DNA of 62,915 nucleotides, the filler included, from Perkinsus chesapeaki ATCC PRA-425 (Eukaryota; Protista; Perkinsozoa), in NCBI GenBank assembly GCA_013115145.1. It is 10 parts of 10 records of this genome, joined end to end, with 100 filler letters (N's around TTAATTAATTAA, not from the genome) between each part and the next. Parts side by side here need not be neighbours in the genome. Positions count along the whole stretch, not along the records: positions 22,612 to 44,257 come from JAAPAO010000592.1; 9 more parts are not named here. One strand, written 5' to 3'. The notes beneath the pieces were generated by a model, which worked only from the letters and a program-made list of their open reading frames with translations, did not search any database and had not been told where the DNA came from. Positions within the stretch are counted from its first letter, which is position 1. The number at the start of each line of letters is the position of its first letter. Below, piece after piece: positions 22,612 to 44,257 of the stretch. Made by a program: the position numbers and the translations under genes.

Positions 22612-22683
<72 letters not shown>
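22612..22683 (+). repeat. (TAC)n microsatellite
   Basis: 24 perfect TAC units directly after the gap. Confidence 0.97.
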
Positions 22684-22688
<5 letters not shown>

Positions 22689-22734
22689 GAACCACCTTCA
22701 CAGTGAAGGTGGTTCTAGAAGTGAAGGCTTCACT
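22682..22734. repeat. Perfect palindrome with 20-bp arms and 1-nt centre, plus a second with 7-bp arms
   Basis: ACTTCTAGAACCACCTTCAC-A-GTGAAGGTGGTTCTAGAAGT, then AGTGAAG-G-CTTCACT. Confidence 0.95.
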
Positions 22735-24091: not shown

Positions 24092-25404
24092 TTATGAGAA
24101 TAATATCCATTCCTTCAGTTTAGGAAACATCTCTTTTAGACCTTTACAGTCATCACAGGTGTATTCAGCCAGGTTGGGTATCCCTCTGAGATCACAGTGG
24201 GTGAGGGCCAGCCCGGTGATCGCATCCAAGCCTCGCTTAGTAATGTCTTTAGCTCCAAACACTGACAACCAGTGAAGCTTCTTATTGCACTTGCCAATAG
24301 TCTCGAGTACAGAGTCGTCCATTTGCTTGCACCAAGTAAGATTTAAATGCTTGAGATTGGGCATGCGTTCAAGGAAGGCTACAGCCGTGGCACTAGTCAG
24401 GTTTATGTGCCCACAGAGGTCTAGAACTTCCAACTTCTCCAAATCCTCAAGAGCTTTGTAACCGTCATCAGAGAACTGCGTTGTAGCGTACAAACGGAGG
24501 ACCTTAAGTGAGCTGCCATAGGAGGCACCGATCGCCATGAGAGATGCGTCACTGATCTTGGGACATCTAGTGAGGTCGAAAGTCTCCAGTGGTGCTCGAC
24601 CAGGCTGGGCGCATGCTGCCATCACGACTCTATCAGTTGTAGCTTTGACACCCGACAGGGAGAGGTAGCGAAGACCTCGATTCGCACGCATGAGGTGGCA
24701 CAGGGCTGTATCCGATGTGATAGCTGCGGACCAGTATAAATCTGAAGGATAATACATGCTCATCTCCTGTAAATCTGACATTTCCGAAATACACACAACT
24801 TGTGCGTCATTCACTATGAATGTTGTTGCATCACTTTCCCGTGCATAGGTTAGCATTCTCTGCGAGCTATGGACTCAATGGCAGCCAAAGCCTCTCTACA
24901 CATGTTAATACTGATCATAAAACATGTGTCAATAATATCAATACATAATATATGATCAGTAATAAAGTATCACTACAGTACTCGTAATTGCAGTTGAGTG
25001 ACGGATAAAGTCATGCGCTTTGAGGAGGAAGAAGAAGCAGAAAGCAGCTCACCTAGGTGTTCCAGATTCCCTGTGTGATGCGCCAGTCCAGTCACCGCGG
25101 CATCATCCAGCCACTGACAAGCGCTCAAATCGAGATGCTTCAGATTCTCGAGGTTCATCTCGGCAATCACCGAAGATAAATTATCGTGGCAAAAATGAAG
25201 TTTGCAGTTTGTAGCTTGGCCACATACAGCTGGATGGCTGACAGCAGCTTTGATCAGAGCAGCCGAGTCTAAGAACTGTAGCCGACGGGAAACGGCGTCA
25301 CGGAAATGACTGCTTAGGATGGATATGTCTGGGAGAGCGGCGAGGTCGAGATAGCCTAGGATGCGGCTGAGAATATCTACATCTAGCGAAACCAGTGTAG
25401 TCAT
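24092..25404 (-). CDS. F-box/leucine-rich-repeat protein (FBXL/AMN1-like), spliced
   Basis: N-terminal F-box-like LVSLDVDILSRILGYLD, then Cys-containing LRRs (LKHLDLSACQWLDD, LETFDLTRCPKISDASL, LKHLNLTWCKQMDDSVL). Confidence 0.85.
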
Positions 25405-28046: not shown

Positions 28047-30600
28047 TCAAACTCTTTGCACACCTACACCAGTACAGTACTGTACAGAGCAGCAGCAGCA
28101 ACAACAACAGCTCACCTGAGTAAGCGAGTTAGCAAAGGACTCATCCTGCCCAAATACGATATAAACTGGATCGTGAACGAGGAACGGCACTTCCTCTATA
28201 ATAGTCTGAAGAACATCAGTCACGTAGTGGTCAGTAATGGTGGCAGTGAAACTGACCCTAATGCTGGCATTGGAGGTCATTCTCCAAGTATCGGTGGGGC
28301 CACAGAAGCGTATGTGATGGCTGCCTCTAGTCTGATAGCCATCAGTGGAGTTGTAGTTGAAGGTAGGCCTCACTCTAACCTGTAGAAGGCAGTCACTACA
28401 CTGTACAGGGCAGCACTAGAGTGAAGTTACAGTAATCATAGGATCGCCTCTGATCCGAGTGATGACACGAAATAGCTGAAACGGTCTGAACATCCTATCA
28501 TAGTGTACAAACTTGGGGGCAAAGTCTTTGATCTGCCAACAACAACAACATAGAGGAAATAAGTAGTGGATAGGATGCTACCTGGACCACATCGTTATTA
28601 CGACTGCTCAACGTTGTGACTAGAATGGCTGTATTTGGGATGTATCTGAATAGCGGTGATAATGCTGGTATTGATGCTGATGCGGGCACCACCGTCTAAG
28701 CGGGGCAATACAGGAAGATAGACATGAGCAGGTGTAAGTAAAATAAGGTAGGATGACAGAAGGATGGTAAATCGACCCGCCGACTTGTCTCAAGAAACGC
28801 AGTTACGGAGGGATAGTCGTACTTTTGCTCGGATCGGACTTGACCTTGCAGCACAACGTCGAAAAAGCCAGACTCCTCGCTATCATTGTTGAGGAGGGAG
28901 TTGAATATAGGGTCACCGTCAAATCTATGGAGATACAAGTAAGGCTAATGGCTAATGGGCGAACGCCAACGCGTCTATACCTGTCCATACAGCACCATAC
29001 CACTCGACTACGCCTATCTATCAGGGCTCCGTATGTACCTATAGCCGAAATGCTGAAATTAGACCTCGACCTTGAAGGGTACCATTCCCAACGACACCCA
29101 GTTGAAGAGGCGCACTGCCTATTGATGAGGAGGAAGAAGGCACTGCTGCACTGGTTAAGGGGGCGATGGAGACTTCCTGGCCCACTGGTGGGTTAGAGAG
29201 GGTCTTGGCAGCGATGCCGAAGGACGCTAGTCTGGGCCCTCCTCCTCCTGTGGAGGGAGTGGGCCCAGGTAATGAGGGGAAGGATGAGGGGGCCTCTATC
29301 CTCGCAAGGGCACCAAAAAACTTATCTTGGCTCTGCTGGCAAGGGATAGTCCAACTCAAACACTACAACACAATAACATAATACTGTAGGACAGAAACTC
29401 TTCACATGGTAAAGGCATCACACATAATCAGTATGAGGGTCTTCCTCAGACTGGCGGACACGGCCCCATCTGCTCCCAGGGGGAACTCGAAGCCTATTGG
29501 CCACTCGGAGCAGCATCTCATAGTGCTTCTTATCCCGGGTCCTAAAGAGCTGATGAAAGAGCCGCGGCGATGAGGAGGGAATTCGTCTTACGCGTATTTC
29601 TCCCTCATAGGGGCCCCTTTGAGGATTTCCTTTTGCTGTGCTTTCGCCACTAACAACAGACGCAGTTGCCACACTCCAAATCGGGCAACGTACGCTTATA
29701 AAGCTTATCGCCTTCACACTCCTGCTCCTCTGAAGTGATAGGCTCGGGCATGGCACACATCGACACCTGAGCGGCAATAGCCGTGTGGCAGAGGCTCAAC
29801 TAGCAGCCCGTCACCTTCGATATTCTTACGCACTCACCGAACATAGAATACCGACGCTTGATGCGAGTCGGCCGCCTAAACGAGCACAGAAGGACGAGTA
29901 GGAGGACGGGGCTGAAGGGGGTTACTTCGTGACAGGATCAACTGGGGCAACGTTGGTTATATGAATGGGTGCCTCGACAGTAACGATATTAGAAGGCTTC
30001 TTGGCCCCTTTGGGTAGCACATCCCGCTTCATTAAGTTAGAAGGTAAAGGCCGCCAAAAGGACCTCACCTACCAAAGGCGTGCATCTCTCTAGGTGATAG
30101 TCAGCCTTACCATATTGCAGCCAGTTACTATCACTTGATTCTTCTGCCAAAGCACATGCCGTATCACACCATGCTTGCCGGCATCTCGGCCATAGAGGAC
30201 CTGCAATAACCATTCCCAGCCTCGCCAGCTGCCATGCAGACCTGGACCAAGTCTCCTGGTTTGATGTTAAATATCTTGGTCATGTTAATATGCTCTGGCT
30301 CCTTGTTCTTGATCTCCTTGGGCATCGACGGCTCCTTCCCCACCTACACCACGACTCCAAACACACCAAGTGTCTTCTGGCCACCTTCAAAAACTCTCTT
30401 GGCCGTATCTTGGTGTATTTATTCCGCAGCTTAGTCCTCATAGCCTTATGAAGGAAAGGCAGGTACTTCAGCGCACTGACGCTGGTAGGCATAGTGGAAA
30501 GAGAAGGAGAGGCAACCCACTGCTCGGATGTGGGCAGGTGTACACAGCTCAAAGGTTGCACAAGGAGACATAAATATGGAACAGAGTGAACAACAGGTTA
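28047..30600 (-). CDS. Probable multi-exon hypothetical protein(s)
   Basis: Series of exon-sized open segments (AYVARFGVWQLRLLLVAKAQQKEILKG; RLFHQLFRTRDKKHYEMLLRVANRL; TDVLQTIIEEVPFLVHDPVYIVFGQDESFANSL). No family recognised; boundaries approximate. Confidence 0.3.
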
Positions 30601-37837: not shown

Positions 37838-40700
37838 ATGGACAATAACAACCCTAATATGGTTGTTGAGTATCTCAATGGGAATGACATCGGCTGTAAT
37901 GTATTAGTAGTCCCTTTTTGTTACGTGGCTGCTGCTGTCATGTCTGAGCCGCTAAATAACAAGGAAGCTCTGCTTTCTAACCTCTGTACTATGCTTTTGG
38001 ATCATTATAAAGGTACTATGGGTAATGGGGACACTAGAGGCAATCTAATGATAGGGGCAGTCGAAGGAGCAAATAAGGTTGAAAGTAATAACGCATCATC
38101 TTCACTTGATACGGTATCTCAATGGATCCGTACCACACCAGGGGCAATGGTAATAATAAATGCCGCATATATGCAGTATTATACTTTATATAGGATCTTA
38201 TTGTGGAACTAAGTAATACCAAACCAGCTATCTCAACGGGTGGTGACCAGGGCTCTATGGCCGTACAAGGTGTCACTAGTGCCACTGGGCCTAGTGAACC
38301 TAAGGAGGAAGAGGATCCACAAACAACAACAGCAGGCAACCTATCAATGCCTACCGGAAAACCTCCTCTAGCTAAGAGGTAATAACGGGTATGTATAGGA
38401 GGATACTTCGGTAGTGGTATCAGGCTATCACGCCCACCTATGATGTCGGTACCTGAGCATGCTCCTGCTACTATGCCACAGGATAACAATGCAGCCATGC
38501 GATTGACTGTTGCAAATAGCAGCAGCAGCAGCACTATCACAGTAGGGTGGAATGATAAAGGGCGATGGTGTTGTATAGGATTGCACTTGTTCTTCAGTTG
38601 GATGATTTAGTTAATGAGATAATATTATTATTGGCTAATACTCAATGGATGTGTGCATCTTTGGCACAGATATTGCCATTGCTCAAACCAGAGAGTAAAA
38701 GCTTTATCCGACAACAACAGGTTACCATTACCTTCCCATACCACACAATACGATATTACTCTATTATAGGTTACCCAAGGGAATCTAATATCCGCAGCTC
38801 ATGGGGACCTTACCCTTGTCACGGGTACTGATATTGTCGTATATACGGGCTCAGTTGATAGGCTGGCCGCCTTACTACAGCAACAGCCACAACAGCAACC
38901 ACAGACCCCTCTGTGGCTTACGACACCACAGCAACAGTTCGTAAGCATATGAAGTTTTATCCCATTGATACCAAGAATAATCATCAGGTGGTAGCGTCAC
39001 CTTTATTCGGACAGAGCCCGTTTAGTGCTGGGCAGGGTGGGTACACTAGCATGATATCGCAGGGTGGCATATTAGCATCACCACTACCACCACAGCAAAC
39101 CATACAACAGGTAGTAGTTATCATAATCTTGCTCATCATCATAGTTAATTGATGTAGGCTATGAGGCTTCAAGCAGCCCAAGCTGTAGCTGCTGCTGGAT
39201 CGATGGCAGTTACTCCCCAAGGCTTGCAACATGCAGGTATTGCCAGGCCTATACCGGGCCCAGGTAATAGATAATGTAGTATATTTTTTGATAATGTTAG
39301 TAGTGCTGTGTTCATTAGGCCAAACCCAACCTAAAAGAGGTGTACTAGATATGGATACTCTTAGTTCATCGCCCCAGCTGGCAGCATTGGTTAAGGAAGT
39401 GAGTGGATGATGATGATAATGCTGCTGCTTTTGTTTGGATAGTAGTCTTGTACATATCCATAAGGTTTCTTTCCTGCTTCTGACTGCTGGTGGACCTTCT
39501 AGACAGCTACTGTTATCAGAGCTGGGCACGCGTATTTCCACGCAATCTAGGTGGGCTGCTTATTACCATCCATCAACAACGGCTACTCCAGTTTTGGTGT
39601 GTAGGGTTTTTTTGAAGCTTAATAGAACTCGGCTCGGCCAGCTGCTTTTGCGATTCCCTAAAGACTTTCTTATTGAAGGACAGAAAGCCAGTGGAAAGGT
39701 AATGCCCATGTAGCAGTGGAATGCTCAAAGCAGATTCCATTGCTCTTTCGTAGGTCACATTAATTCGACCAGAGGTAATCCAGTGCCCATCTACCCCTGT
39801 ACCATTGGAGAAGGACCTTATGGTTGATAATAACGTACCAACAGACAACAACAACAACAACAATGATCTCTCGGACGCTGTAGCTGCTGTCGCATGCTCC
39901 TTGCCTTGCTTGCCATCCCTTTATATTAGCCCCCTCCTGGTATGTCATCCAAGCCTGTCATGGGCAAGAGTGACGTCATTCATAACACATTCTCCCAAAC
40001 TGGAGGTTTTTTTGTGAGTCTGCCTGCTGCATCGCTTTAGTGAGTGTCTATTGTGATTAGGGAGCACCCAGTCAGAGTGGACCGATAGGAGCATCGTCTA
40101 CGACCACAGTAAAGCCTGGAAGCTACCAGAAGAACACCAGGCTAGCTGACCTTGGATCGGGCTTATCGGTCGATGTTGCTGGGGCGCTATCGCGCATCCA
40201 GCAGCAGCAACAGCAACAACAGGGAAGGGACGTACAAGGCAGCAACAGCAACACGCAGGTAATGTGATAGGCGGTTATCGCTATGTAGGTATGTTGGCTG
40301 TTAGTTGTATTTGGCACCACAACAGTTGATATCATCACCGTTGCCGTTGGTAAGCCCAGGTACTGCACTTGGCATGACCCCTTTTTCCGCAGTACCAAGG
40401 TAATAATAATGTATTATGTTGACAACAGTATTATGGGCTTTAGATCGGTGGCAGAAGGTGTCCTACAGACACCAGCATTAGGAAGACAAGAATAAGCAGT
40501 ATGTTATCAATACTCTTTACTCAGTAAATACTACTAGAAGGGCAGTGTCAGAGGCAACAACAAGAACTGCTGCAGCAGCAGCTGCTGTGAAGCGCTGTTG
40601 TTACTGCTGTTGTATGTCGTCCTTATGTCACCATATAGAGTGTCAGTTGTTAATGCTGCTACTACTTTAGTTGTCTTGTTCTTCTCCTACTCCTTCTCGC
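37838..40700 (+). CDS. Multi-exon low-complexity (Q/N/T/S-rich) protein with a possible OST-HTH/LOTUS-like domain
   Basis: Open exon segments rich in Q/T/N. Segment SFLLLTAGGPSRQLLLSELGTRI..YYHP..RLGQLLLRFPKDFLI fits an OST-HTH winged-helix pattern. Boundaries approximate. Confidence 0.4.
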
Positions 40701-40930
40701 CCTACTACCCCCTACGTACAATTTAGCCCTTATCAACATTGCTATCGATTATGTTGCTCACGCTTTAAGCGAACGCAGAAGAACTATCCTTAATAGTAAC
40801 AGCATCTGTCTTGCTGCTATCTTCTCCGAAGGTTACTGCTAAGTACCCACCTATCAAATGTCTATTATCACATAATCACAAGCTTGCGTTGTTGTAGTCA
40901 GTTATATCACAATATCTAGTATCATCTACA

Positions 40931-42783
40931 ATGACATTATTTCTATCTGTTCACTTTATCCTTGCCGGTCTTATCGCCACCAAATCGGTGATGGCCTATG
41001 AGGAACCACTTAATACACAAATTCAGTATACATCAATCGATCCAAAGGTATTGTTCTCACCACCCAGTCGCTGGGAAGTGCCCGATTCTCAGGCAGATTG
41101 TGCGGAAGTGATGAGATCGTTGATTTCGTCAGTGATGGAAGTTGCCACACAACTTAGCACGCTGAAAGATACTTCCTATGCTATGGCAGGTCGCAGGTTG
41201 GCCTCCTCTCTACTGGGAGATTTGTGTGTCTTTTTCAGGGGATATGACTGGACGGCTCTCGGGTACTCATTACACGGCATCAGAGTTGGCCAACACTAGC
41301 TCTGTGCTCTTCCCGCTGGTATCGAGTGCTACACAGATGGTCTGGGGACTCGTGGCCCACATTTCCCATGTTATGATGACTCGGCAGGAATTATGTGTCA
41401 CTGAAGAGAGCAAAGAGTTGGTTCACTTAGCCATACTGTCAGTGTCAGAGGCGATGAAGAGCCTAACGAGTGGGGCTGATGCTTCTTCCGTCACTTCTGC
41501 CTAGTATTTCAGGATCAATGTGGCATATGGTTAACTTGGGCTCGTTTGGTGACTATGGATCACCCTACCGGAATATAGGGCTCCTGTTGGATATCTATCA
41601 TCCACTGTTTCAAGCAATCAACTTGGTTAACGACGCAGTGGAGCAACTCGGTCTCGACAGGTCTCCAAGAGTCACTTTCGGCGGCCACGAGCCTGATGGA
41701 ATGTTCACTCGTACAGTGGTGATGTATAGAAAATTGTTCCCGGAGAAGGCCCACTTGGACAAAGGCCTGCTCCGCACCCTTTTAAGGCTTCTACCGAAGG
41801 ATTCTTCACTGTGCGATTTTGGTGCATTAGATGGAAGATACGCCACATGGCTCAACGATACTGGCCTTATAAAGGCCTTTGCTATTGATGGTGTTCGAGG
41901 CATATCAGAGCTCACAAATGGGGCCGTTACAGAAGCCGATCTCACTACTAGTAACTTGAAGCTGTGGACGACCTTTGACTGTGTTCTATCCCTTGAAGTG
42001 GCAGAGCATATACCTAAGCAGTACGAAGGTGTATTCCTAGATAACCTTGGACGGCATGCTCAACGGTGTTTGATAATATCATGGGCACTACCAGATTCCC
42101 TAGGGGAAGGTCATGTTAACAGTCTTGCGGAAGGGGAATCTCACAGAAGGATAGTTGAACGAATCGGTATGGTACGAGATGAAAATGCAACACTGTTATT
42201 GCGTAAAAGTGCCGATATTGATTGGATAGGCAGTACTGTAGCAATGTATATTAGACCATCATCACCTCACTATATAAATACATCCTATATGCCTAAGATG
42301 TCGAGTTTTATTATCAAAATGAGTCTGTTACCAGACCGACTTATAGAATCGGTTCACGAAATCCGGGGAATGGGCATTCTTGGGTTCACGATGGAACTTT
42401 TACCTGCTTTCGGTGGTTGTGGTCTTAGCATTTTGGCTTGCTTTCGACGAAAGCCTTTCGTAGCCTTATCACCCAGAGCCTCTTTTCCCACTTTTTCCCC
42501 TGCCGGTGAACTGTATATGGATCGAAGAACTCTCCTCTTCACACGGGAGCTGGACTGTGATCGCGTTTGGTGGACGTCGCTTGAGCTGAATGATAATGGG
42601 TCTTCACTCGAGGACAACCCTATAAAGTGGGCAACAGCGCCGCGTGCATTTGTCAATGTTCGCTTGATTCAGAAACTGTTATCGTTCTTAGTAGCTCCGG
42701 TCCTGTCCATCAGACTGATGGCATCAGTAGTGAAGATGACGAAACAAGTAGCGACCTATTCCTTGCTTGCATACACCGAATGA
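40931..42783 (+). CDS. Class I SAM-dependent methyltransferase with N-terminal signal peptide; ORF continues into an unrelated C-terminal region
   Basis: Signal MTLFLSVHFILAGLIATKSVMA; motif I LCDFGALDGRY; FDCVLSLEVAEHIP; IISWA..GEGHVN. Further exon-like sequence extends to about 43020. Confidence 0.75.
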
Positions 42784-43319
42784 CGCCGGATGGAGAATTT
42801 TCCGTTTTGTGGGCGATTGAGCAAGATGATATACTGGACTTCGATTGCACATTCCGTCGCTGGGACGAAAGCTTGCAGCAGTTGGTTTTTTCTTCTTAAC
42901 GACGACAGCGGTGGGTGTATGGGAGACCTTGAAGTTGAGTCTACAGTGGACTGTCTACTTAGTAGACATCTGGAATCCAGGTTCTCGATGACTGACCAGT
43001 ATGAGGTCAACTGTGTTTAGCCCAGTCACGCAGATTCGCAGCTATGCTGTACGAGATTTTACTTTTGAACTTTTCTCTCTCTGAGGTTCCACAACAAGGT
43101 TCCTGTGCTATTGATCTTGAAATAGTCTTGTAGTTTTCCAATATTTGATGCTTGCGTTGTAATTCGATTCAGGATTCTTGGGTCAGTGTCATCATAGTAT
43201 GATGATCACACCACTAGTACCTTCATTCATGGCTGCTAGTTGCCCGGCCCGTTCGTTGTGGACAACTTCGAATAAGACTCATTCGGCGCCTCACACTGTG
43301 AGGCTCACAGTGAGGCCCT

Positions 43320-44257
43320 CACTTGGTGAGGCCAACACTTGACAATGTCAAGTTGACATACGAGGGGTACAATTACGAGAAGAAGACTCCTAGGTCAGCC
43401 CGTCCGGCACGACCTACTGGTACTGCACCAGTCGCAGTTCTTCTGCAGGTTTAATCGTTAAGGGCGATGCCTTCCATGACCTTTCTTAAAGAAAGTTTCT
43501 CCTGTGACAGGAGTCCTGTCTTGGTAAGTTACCAATGGTAACTAGAGGTATTAAAGGGCATGATTGTTCGGCCCCCAATGCGGCGGTTGATATTCTGAGG
43601 GCCACTTTCCGGTCACCGGATTGAAGCCCCACCGTGGGGGCCCCACATGCATCTGCGACCTATCTTTGACGAGGTAGTCTCGTCGGTTGAGAAAGAGGTG
43701 GTCGAACAGCTGGCACCAGTAAGGACATGCTTGAATACGATGCATGCGCATCGTAAAAGAGCTGATCCAAACCCACTGGCTCTGCTAAGTCGTACTGATT
43801 TCTCTATTCCTGCTGAATTCAAGACCGCAGCTATCGGCGGACAGGAGTACACTACTCTCGCGCTGGACTCTGGCTCCCTCAATCCCGATCGTATCACATG
43901 CTACTACAATCCAGGCTGGAATATCCAGCTGTCTTGAAGGAACTTCTAGCGGCGTGCTCTGAGTTTCACAGTGAAACTTTCACTAGTCTCTAGACGTGGC
44001 TTTCGATCACTGCGCCCAAATTTGATAACTGTTTTTGTGGAAGTTGCGTTCACTAAACGGGTTATAGATCCAGTTTCCGAACCCATTCCGAAACCGTTCT
44101 TTTGCGGCAGACTGGGGAATTTGGCGGCGAGTGACGGTGTATTTTTGCGGAGTGCTTTAGGATTCACCCCGGCTTGAGGCCCTCAAGTTGTGGCGACGAA
44201 CCAAGGTGTCCGTCGGAAAGAGCTGGTGGCGGATCCATAATGAACACAATGCAGATG
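43320..44257 (+). mobile_element. Degenerate Mutator-like (MULE) transposase with FLYWCH-like zinc finger
   Basis: Across frameshifts: LTYEGYNYEKK..SGTTYWYCTSRSS..GHDC, then PIFDEVV..LAPVRTCLNTMHAHRKRADPNP..FSIPAEFKT..LALDSGSLNPDRITCY, then ELLAACSEFH..DVAF, matching the usual MULE layout up to the first catalytic Asp. Confidence 0.65.
43481..43543. repeat. Three adjacent X-n-revcomp(X)-n-X modules inserted in the FLYWCH coding region
   Basis: CTTTCTT-A-AAGAAAG-TTTCT; C-TCCTGT-G-ACAGGA-G-TCCTGT-C; T-TGGTAA-G-TTACCA-A-TGGTAA-C. Confidence 0.95.

What the first reader, a model, noticed from the sequence alone, without database searches (positions are those of the whole stretch)
43288..43984. 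MULE relic riddled with footprints; collapsing them restores the FLYWCH reading frame
Seen: within about 700 bp there are four perfect 22-mers (43338, 43499, 43521, 43963), one variant (43481-43500), a mutated core CCCCAC-C-GTGGGG-G-CCCCAC (43627-43646) and a chain of fold-backs at 43288-43331. As written, 43481-43543 reads LS*RKFLL*QESCLGKLPMVT. Removing 14 nt from each of the three modules gives GDAFHD-LSPVLVT-RGIKGHDCSAPNAAVDILR with no stops. Collapsing 43627-43646 puts KPH in frame with MHLRPIFDEV. This is direct internal evidence that the motifs are secondary +14-nt insertions into a once-coding gene. Inference: this locus was hit at least six times, so it is either a hotspot or a target of transposon-inactivating scarring.
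Basis: partly seen in the sequence, partly recalled or inferred. Interest (0 to 1): 0.88.

Follow-up and report, generated by a model that had tools for sequence, protein, structure and literature searches.

The report
Transposon excision scars in a dead MULE
A dead Mutator-like transposon gene in the clam parasite Perkinsus chesapeaki carries at least 16 identical-format 14-base scars, each being what a cut-and-paste transposon with an 8-base target duplication should leave when it jumps out through DNA hairpins; the chemistry is known, but so uniform and dense a natural record of it is unusual.

Summary
Every motif has the form F(T) = T[1-7] + revcomp(T) + T[2-8], for an 8-nt local sequence T, a net gain of 14 nt.

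- **Count:** the contig holds 7 perfect copies (8 with a nested one), where chance predicts 0. Another 8 have 1-2 mismatches. All but two lie in 42440-44194.
- **Fixed size:** only n=8 occurs perfectly: 10 copies across two Perkinsus species. One 1-mismatch n=9 copy occurs in P. marinus.
- **Host gene:** sister proteins from P. marinus and P. olseni (FLYWCH + MULE domains) align without gaps across every collapsed site, so the motifs are secondary insertions into a MULE gene.
- **Other damage:** the relic also has two frameshifts and two stop codons unrelated to the motifs.
- **Mechanism:** F(T) is the product expected from three steps: insertion with an 8-bp target duplication, hAT/MULE-type excision leaving hairpins on the flanks, and joining of the two unfolded hairpin tails on the inverted duplication.
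- **Independent support:** a variant scar at 22682-22734 keeps both tails.
- **Not introns:** spliced-leader mRNA retains module 42707.

Verdict: excision footprints, most likely of a MULE-family element. This is a new variant of a known kind. The clustering at MULE loci in three species is unexplained.

The parts
43277..44019 (+). Relic of the 5' part of a FLYWCH-MULE transposase gene. The DDE/MULE domain itself is not in the contig, and homology stops near 44019.
   Evidence: tblastn of P0001, P0002 and P0003. Pfam FLYWCH and MULE on the sister proteins.
42440..42461 (.). Perfect footprint module, T = GCTTTCGT. It lies directly upstream of a spliced-leader acceptor.
42707..42728 (.). Perfect module, T = CCATCAGT. 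It is retained in spliced-leader mRNA.
   Evidence: records 17 and 22
42938..42989 (.). Two degenerate modules, 42938-42959 (1 mismatch) and 42968-42989 (2 mismatches), with an extra 8-arm palindrome centred on 42960 between them. Both are retained in mRNA.
43060..43075 (.). Candidate classical short footprint, TACTTTT-GA-ACTTTTC, with 1+1 palindromic (P) nucleotides. Weak evidence.
   Evidence: 2 hits of this class against 0.6 expected
43190..43211 (.). Module with 1 mismatch, T = CATCATAC.
43288..43323 (.). Two nested perfect modules. The inner one is 43289-43310 (T = CCTCACAG). The outer one has T = GCCTCACT.
43338..43359 (.). Perfect module, T = CTTGACAT, inside the FLYWCH coding region.
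43481..43542 (.). Three abutting modules: 43481-43502 (2 mismatches), 43499-43520 and 43521-43542 (both perfect). They were inserted into about 20 bp of original coding sequence.
43608..43620 (.). A 13-nt palindrome at a residual frameshift that module collapse does not explain.
43626..43647 (.). Module with 2 mismatches, T = GCCCCACA. Collapsing it joins KPH to MHLRPIFDEV.
43908..43929 (.). Module with 1 mismatch, T = AATCCAGC.
43963..43984 (.). Perfect module, T = GTTTCACT.
44173..44194 (.). Doubtful module (2 mismatches). Its third arm is the start of the multi-copy repeat, and a similar palindrome lies upstream of another copy of that repeat.
22682..22734 (.). Variant footprint, T = CCTTCACT. 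A 20+1+20 palindrome and a 7+1+7 palindrome are joined on a shared AGT, so both unfolded hairpin tails are preserved.
42462..43003 (+). Trans-spliced transcript. Acceptor AGs lie at 42462 and 42475, and the GT..AG intron 42627-42672 is removed. It has no long open reading frame.
44189..44257 (.). Start of a roughly 28-copy expressed repeat that ends the contig.
   Evidence: depth 2154 against 77, with many different left flanks

Best explanation
**What the motifs are.** Each 22-mer is the scar left when a cut-and-paste DNA transposon inserted and later excised.

**Proposed steps.**
1. The element inserted and duplicated an 8-bp target T.
2. It excised by the hAT/MULE/RAG-type route. The first nick falls 1 nt into the flank, and each flank is sealed as a hairpin. 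The tip base of each hairpin is the complement of the base that adjoined the element.
3. Both hairpins were unfolded into 3' tails. The left tail carries revcomp(T) and the right tail carries T, so they anneal over 8 nt.
4. Flap trimming and ligation give T[1-7] + revcomp(T) + T[2-8], a net gain of 14 nt.

**The agent.** It is most likely a MULE-family element, autonomous or a derivative. hAT and Merlin elements are not excluded.

**Where the scars sit.** At least 16 such cycles hit a 1.75-kb stretch made of a FLYWCH-MULE pseudogene and its upstream region.

**Shown:**
- the geometry of the modules;
- the fixed 8-nt size;
- that the modules are secondary insertions;
- that one module is retained in mRNA.

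**Inferred:**
- the hairpin and microhomology route;
- the identity of the element;
- the cause of the clustering.
For: 1. **Fixed size.** Perfect modules exist only for n=8: 10 in P. chesapeaki plus P. olseni DNA, against 0 expected. There are none for n=6 or n=9-13, and the single n=7 match is a CAG/CTG repeat. With up to 1 mismatch there are 15 at n=8 and one at n=9. This matches the 8- or 9-bp duplications of the FLYWCH-MULE Muta1 (PMC5225508).
2. **Centre rule.** Both palindrome centres are always the complement of the outer base of T. The same rule is reported for Ac/Ds footprints (PMC5873905).
3. **Simulation.** A strand-level simulation of the two-tail model reproduces F(T) in 1000 of 1000 random cases.
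4. **Variant scar.** The scar at 22682-22734 preserves both tails, joined on a different 3-nt microhomology, and obeys the same T rule. Chance expectation is 0.0.
5. **Target preference.** Symmetrised target sites show T at position 3 and A at position 6 in 18 of 30 counts. A two-fold symmetric preference is typical of DDE transposases.
6. **Secondary insertion.** Sister proteins align without gaps across collapsed sites.
7. **Known MULE chemistry.** Muta1 forms flank hairpins and appears to cut outside its terminal inverted repeat (PMC5499845, PMC5225508).
8. **Association with MULE loci.** Modules lie in or within 0.9 kb of MULE coding homology in the window and in L003 (P. marinus). In L001 (P. 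olseni) one lies about 230 bp upstream and two lie about 0.6 and 1.1 kb downstream of it.
Against: - No 'filled' site was found, meaning an element still flanked by an 8-bp duplication.
- No terminal inverted repeats or target duplication could be found for the intact P. marinus MULE.
- Experimental MULE excisions in yeast are mostly precise. Palindrome arms as long as 7 nt have been reported for hAT, not for MULE (PMC5225508, PMC5873905).
- The near-exclusive use of one repair product is assumed to reflect microhomology joining. The DNA repair genes of Perkinsus were not examined.
- The extreme clustering, including three hits within 20 bp and nested hits, is not predicted by the model without an added targeting assumption.
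Confidence: 0.78

Rival explanations
1. Replication or repair template switching (fold-back synthesis) with no transposon involved. A polymerase copies T, switches to the opposite strand, copies back, then switches again. The result is a direct-inverted-direct triplication.
For: The direct-inverted-direct layout is what double template switches produce. Chains and nested modules could arise if palindromes promote further switching.
Against: The unit length is fixed at 8 nt in all 10 perfect cases from two species. Both turns carry a constant 1-nt offset. There is a symmetric target-site preference. The variant at 22682-22734 has a 20-nt tail on one side and 7 nt on the other, yet follows the same T rule. 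Template switching predicts variable lengths.
Confidence: 0.08
2. A dedicated process aimed at transposon DNA. Examples are a domesticated transposase, or homing of elements to transposase-binding sites. Either would repeatedly cut MULE sequences and scar them, acting as self-inactivation or as a defence.
For: 15 of 17 events in the 21.6-kb contig fall in the 1.75-kb MULE stretch. MULE loci of P. olseni and P. marinus also carry clusters. In the relic's coding part, modules outnumber all other disabling lesions, about 9 to 4.
Against: One clear scar lies 20 kb away, next to a microsatellite. One MULE locus, L002, has none. Only 36 kb of Perkinsus DNA was examined. Relaxed selection and local hopping could contribute to clustering. 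No candidate enzyme was identified.
Confidence: 0.1
3. The 14-nt hairpin inserts are very small introns or programmed eliminated sequences, removed from RNA or from somatic DNA. This would resemble the hairpin-forming non-canonical introns of Amoebophrya.
For: The layout resembles Amoebophrya introner elements, where a direct repeat overlaps the 5' arm and recurs 1 nt after the 3' arm (PMC7789003).
Against: Mature mRNA contigs carry the spliced leader, and one has a neighbouring GT..AG intron removed. These contigs keep module 42707-42728, and one of them (record 17) also keeps the modules at 42938 and 42968. The relic has independent stops and frameshifts. DNA contigs from two data sets keep all modules.
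Confidence: 0.02
4. Assembly or sequencing artefact, such as hairpin chimeras.
For: The contig is short and ends in repeats.
Against: The same sequence occurs in two independent DNA data sets and in 454 cDNA from environmental samples. The same motif type occurs in assemblies of two other species.
Confidence: 0.01

Closest known systems
Ac/Ds (hAT) excision footprints in plants, S. cerevisiae and Candida albicans
   Same: Palindromic insertions centred on the complement of the base next to the element. An 8-bp target duplication. Microhomology use at the joint. Palindrome arms of up to 20 nt in yeast (PMC5873905).
   Different: Experimental footprints are heterogeneous and mostly carry 1-3 palindromic nucleotides. 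Here one product dominates, the full inverted duplication joined on 8 nt. It is found as a fossil record in a natural genome. No hAT element was identified here.
Muta1, the FLYWCH-type MULE of Aedes aegypti
   Same: The same transposase architecture as the sister proteins (FLYWCH plus MULE/DDE). Target duplications of 8 or 9 bp. Hairpins on flanking DNA. Cleavage apparently outside the terminal repeat. Repair guided by homology in the duplication (PMC5499845, PMC5225508).
   Different: In yeast about 90% of Muta1 excisions are precise, using the direct duplication. The inverted-duplication product F(T) was not reported. The Perkinsus proteins are only about 28-33% identical to animal FLYWCH-MULEs.
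P nucleotides at V(D)J coding joints (RAG)
   Same: Flank hairpins are opened off-centre, which gives palindromic additions.
   Different: There is no target duplication, so there is no third arm. The additions are normally 1-4 nt.
Introner elements and non-canonical introns of Amoebophrya
   Same: Short inverted repeats with direct repeats at the borders, in a related alveolate lineage (PMC7789003).
   Different: Those are family-specific repeated sequences that are spliced from RNA. The modules here are built from local sequence and stay in mRNA.

Membership tests
MULE (Mutator-like) transposon relic, the host sequence | N-terminal FLYWCH/WRKY-type zinc finger | tested here: met
   The window aligns to P0001 and P0002. 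Their N-termini hit PF04500 above its cutoff: 26.8 and 24.9 bits against 23.6. A local FLYWCH-MULE profile gives 30.8 bits on the collapsed reading. Uncollapsed window pieces alone give no Pfam hit.
MULE (Mutator-like) transposon relic, the host sequence | MULE/DDE catalytic domain (PF10551) | tested here: not met
   Homology ends near 44019, before the domain. The domain is present in sisters P0002 and P0003. The window holds only the 5' part of the gene.
MULE (Mutator-like) transposon relic, the host sequence | Terminal inverted repeats flanked by 8-10 bp target duplications | tested here: inconclusive
   No long inverted repeats occur in 42500-44257. The contig ends at 44257. None was found around the intact P. 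marinus copy either.
Hairpin-type (hAT/MULE) excision footprint | Two copies of a fixed-length target duplication flank the scar | tested here: met
   T[1-7] and T[2-8] flank every module. The length is 8 in 10 of 10 perfect cases, with one 9.
Hairpin-type (hAT/MULE) excision footprint | Palindromic additions centred on the complement of the base that adjoined the element | tested here: met
   True of both centres in all perfect modules and in the variant scar.
Hairpin-type (hAT/MULE) excision footprint | The pre-insertion state is a single T (empty site) | tested here: met
   This is shown at the protein level only. Sister proteins align without gaps across 8 collapsed sites. No orthologous empty allele was available.
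Hairpin-type (hAT/MULE) excision footprint | An element of the responsible family seen occupying such sites | not testable with these tools
   Only about 36 kb of Perkinsus DNA could be fetched. The multi-copy repeat at 44189 runs off the contig, and a metagenome scan for it found nothing.

The most novel reading that the evidence does not exclude
In Perkinsus, MULE DNA may itself be a homing target. Transposase-binding sites or the palindromic scars could attract new insertions. Repeated insertion and excision would then progressively destroy resident copies. The invariant 22-nt signature would record otherwise invisible excision events across the genome.
Probability: 0.2. Interest if true: 0.72.

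Novelty: new variant of a known kind. Interest (0 to 1): 0.55.

Why it matters
- **A countable record.** Excision events normally leave small, variable marks that cannot be recognised later. Here the scar has one exact, recognisable format. Past insertion-excision cycles could therefore be counted across Perkinsus genomes.
- **First hints on Perkinsus DNA handling.** The scars give sequence-level evidence for hairpin-forming cut-and-paste transposition in Perkinsozoa. They also suggest a break-repair route dominated by microhomology.
- **Possible self-targeting.** The clustering in MULE loci of three species hints at self-targeting of a transposon family.
- **Annotation.** The public gene model FOL47_008889 fuses a methyltransferase to a fragment of the relic. 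It ends at a stop codon created by a scar.

Tried and rejected
- Rfam found nothing in 42000-44257.
- Bacterial promoter and terminator scans were uninformative.
- Pfam on the uncollapsed window pieces gave no FLYWCH hit. The pieces are too short.
- A search for terminal inverted repeats plus an 8- or 9-bp duplication around the intact P. marinus MULE found nothing.
- A metagenome scan for the repeat at 44189 found nothing.
- A homologue search with P0002 returned almost no further Perkinsus copies. No larger sample of Perkinsus DNA could be fetched, so the background density rests on about 36 kb.
- Summed tblastn scores across frames discriminate poorly. The random maximum was 226 bits against 230 for P0001. 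The best single HSP is the cleaner measure.
- Short classical footprints with 0-4 palindromic nucleotides are not enriched over chance, apart from a candidate at 43060.
- The upstream transcript has no long open reading frame, with or without collapse. An upstream protein-coding gene was therefore rejected.
- Literature searches on Perkinsus end-joining genes gave nothing useful.
- PMC321453 (Yu et al. 2004) is not held in the library.

Full report
**Source.** The piece 22612-44257 is a whole 21,646-bp contig of Perkinsus chesapeaki.
- The methyltransferase upstream of the finding matches 'FOL47_008889 [Perkinsus chesapeaki]'. That protein's longest contig has exactly this length.
- cDNA contigs laid on the window carry the dinoflagellate-type spliced leader at acceptor AGs at 40918, 42462 and 42475. 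They lack short GT..AG introns of 45-49 nt.

**Observation.** Reading the region and scanning for odd palindromes shows that every motif is two overlapping 15-nt palindromes whose centres lie 7 nt apart.
- Stated exactly, F(T) = T[1-7] + revcomp(T[1-8]) + T[2-8], where T is a local 8-mer. The net gain is 14 nt.
- F(T) reads the same on both strands.
- Perfect copies lie at 42440, 42707, 43289, 43338, 43499, 43521 and 43963. Zero are expected in 200 shuffles.
- One-mismatch copies lie at 42938, 43190 and 43908.
- Two-mismatch copies lie at 42968, 43302, 43481, 43626 and 44173, with a lone one at 30239.
- Iterative collapse shows that the 'chain' at 43288-43323 is one perfect module inserted into another. 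It gives 16 events in 42300-44257.

**What the motifs interrupt.** An exhaustive search with the 96-aa open reading frame 43647-43934 found three relatives.

| Protein | Species | Pfam domains |
|---|---|---|
| P0001 | P. marinus | FLYWCH |
| P0002 | P. olseni | FLYWCH + MULE |
| P0003 | P. marinus (Pmar_PMAR029490), 776 aa | MULE |

- Aligned to the DNA, the original sequence needs three frames and many gaps.
- After removing 14 nt from eight modules, P0001 aligns without gaps over 120 residues, across sites 43626, 43908 and 43963. It aligns with one gap over a further 81 residues, across 43481, 43499 and 43521.
- The best HSP (159 and 149 bits) exceeds all 300 random sets of eight 14-nt deletions.
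- A profile built from 19 FLYWCH-MULE N-termini rises from 9.1 to 14.6 bits. It reaches 30.8 bits when one further break is bridged with X.
- The sister open reading frames carry no module at these sites.
- The modules are therefore secondary insertions into a once-coding MULE gene.
- Lesions unrelated to modules remain: a -1 shift in a C-run near 43395, a shift at the 13-nt palindrome 43608-43620, and two in-frame stops (TW*GQ and EFH*SLD).
- Homology stops near 44019, before the DDE domain.

**What makes the modules.**
1. *Fixed size.* Across the window and three fetched Perkinsus loci, perfect modules exist only for n=8. There are 10, including three in the P. olseni locus L001. None exist for n=6 or n=9-13, and the single n=7 match is a CAG/CTG repeat. 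With one mismatch allowed, n=8 gives 15 and n=9 gives one, in the P. marinus locus L003. A fixed 8-nt unit with a rare 9 points to an enzyme-set target duplication. The FLYWCH-MULE Muta1 makes duplications of 8 or 9 bp (PMC5225508).
2. *Centre rule.* Both palindrome centres are the complement of the outermost base of T. [quoted passage not shown]
3. *A working model.* Take hairpin-sealed flanks with a 1-nt offset. Unfold both hairpins into 3' tails, and anneal revcomp(T) on one tail with T on the other. This reproduces F(T) in 1000 of 1000 simulated cases.
4. *An independent scar.* At 22682-22734 there is a 20+1+20 palindrome followed by AGTGAAG-G-CTTCACT, overlapping on AGT. Both palindromes obey the same rule for a single T = CCTTCACT (0.0 expected). 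Here the two tails were joined on a different microhomology, so both remain visible.
5. *Target preference.* Symmetrised targets show T at position 3 and A at position 6 in 18 of 30 counts.

Muta1 is known to form flank hairpins, appears to cut outside its terminal repeat, and uses duplication homology in repair (PMC5499845, PMC5225508). In yeast that repair usually restores the site precisely. If the same holds here, the visible F(T) scars are a minority of all excision cycles.

**Rivals.**
- *Tiny introns.* Excluded for the modules at 42707, 42938 and 42968. Spliced-leader cDNA contigs retain them, and one of those contigs has the neighbouring intron removed.
- *Artefact.* Excluded by two DNA data sets, by cDNA, and by two other species' assemblies.
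- *Template switching.* It does not predict a fixed 8-nt unit or the asymmetric variant scar.
- *A dedicated scarring process.* Not needed for the geometry, but it bears on the clustering.

**Clustering (unexplained).**
- 15 of 17 events in the contig lie in its last 1.75 kb. They include three hits within about 20 bp of original sequence, and nested hits.
- L001 (P. olseni) has three perfect modules around its MULE gene.
- L003 (P. marinus) has a cluster of palindromes 400-650 bp upstream of its intact MULE open reading frame.
- L002 has none.
- Possible causes are relaxed selection on dead transposon DNA, local hopping of a nearby element, tethering to transposase-binding sites, and a preference for palindromic targets.
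- A roughly 28-copy expressed repeat starts at 44189, and a 2-copy stretch starts at 44027. The relic may be a deletion derivative that ends in a shared terminal region, but the contig stops there.

**Agent.** A MULE is favoured by the association with MULE loci, the 8/9-bp unit and the known hairpin chemistry. hAT (8 bp, hairpin) and Merlin (8-9 bp, present in P. marinus according to PMC8101967, chemistry unknown) are not excluded. No occupied site was seen.

**Verdict.** The motifs are excision footprints of one exact format, a special outcome of a known mechanism. They are recorded at unusual density in and around a MULE pseudogene, and they also occur at MULE loci of two sister species.

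Noticed in passing
window 42190-43486: The public gene model FOL47_008889 (P0027) joins the methyltransferase exon to 'LIVKGDAFHDLS' from the MULE relic across about 1.25 kb. It ends at a stop codon created by module 43481. This is probably a chimeric annotation.
   Followed up: partly
window 44189-44257 (and 44027 onward): Depth jumps from about 77 to about 2154 at 44189, and many different left flanks meet there. This marks a roughly 28-copy repeat that is also present in cDNA. One other copy shares sequence from 44027. Another copy has a similar TTGAGG-n-CCTCAA palindrome upstream.
   Followed up: partly
window 40918, 42462, 42475; introns 41046-41090, 41187-41235, 42627-42672: Spliced-leader acceptor sites and three short GT..AG introns are supported by environmental cDNA contigs identical to the window.
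   Followed up: partly
window 24905-24965: An AT-rich 30+1+30 palindrome, 77% complementary, with a single-base centre. It may be an old long-armed scar or a fold-back element.
   Followed up: no
L003:4300-4610: A dense run of palindromes upstream of the intact P. marinus MULE open reading frame. It includes a 9-nt-unit module at 4335 and 8-nt-unit modules at 4388 and 4503. The annotated protein starts inside the FLYWCH motif, and the alignment to P0001 begins 45 nt upstream of the called start (4944 against 4989).
   Followed up: partly
L001:2880-2916: The module at 2895 is preceded by a further inverted arm (CACTAT-C-ATAGTG), which makes a four-arm chain like the one at window 43288.
   Followed up: no
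P0003 residues about 560-776: From reading the sequence only, the C-terminal part of the P. marinus MULE protein looks like a Ulp1-type cysteine protease domain, as in some plant MULEs. This was not tested.
   Followed up: no
window 39863-40199: DNA contigs of both data sets show a joint that skips about 335 nt in a CAG-rich low-complexity region. This may be a length variant or an assembly collapse.
   Followed up: no
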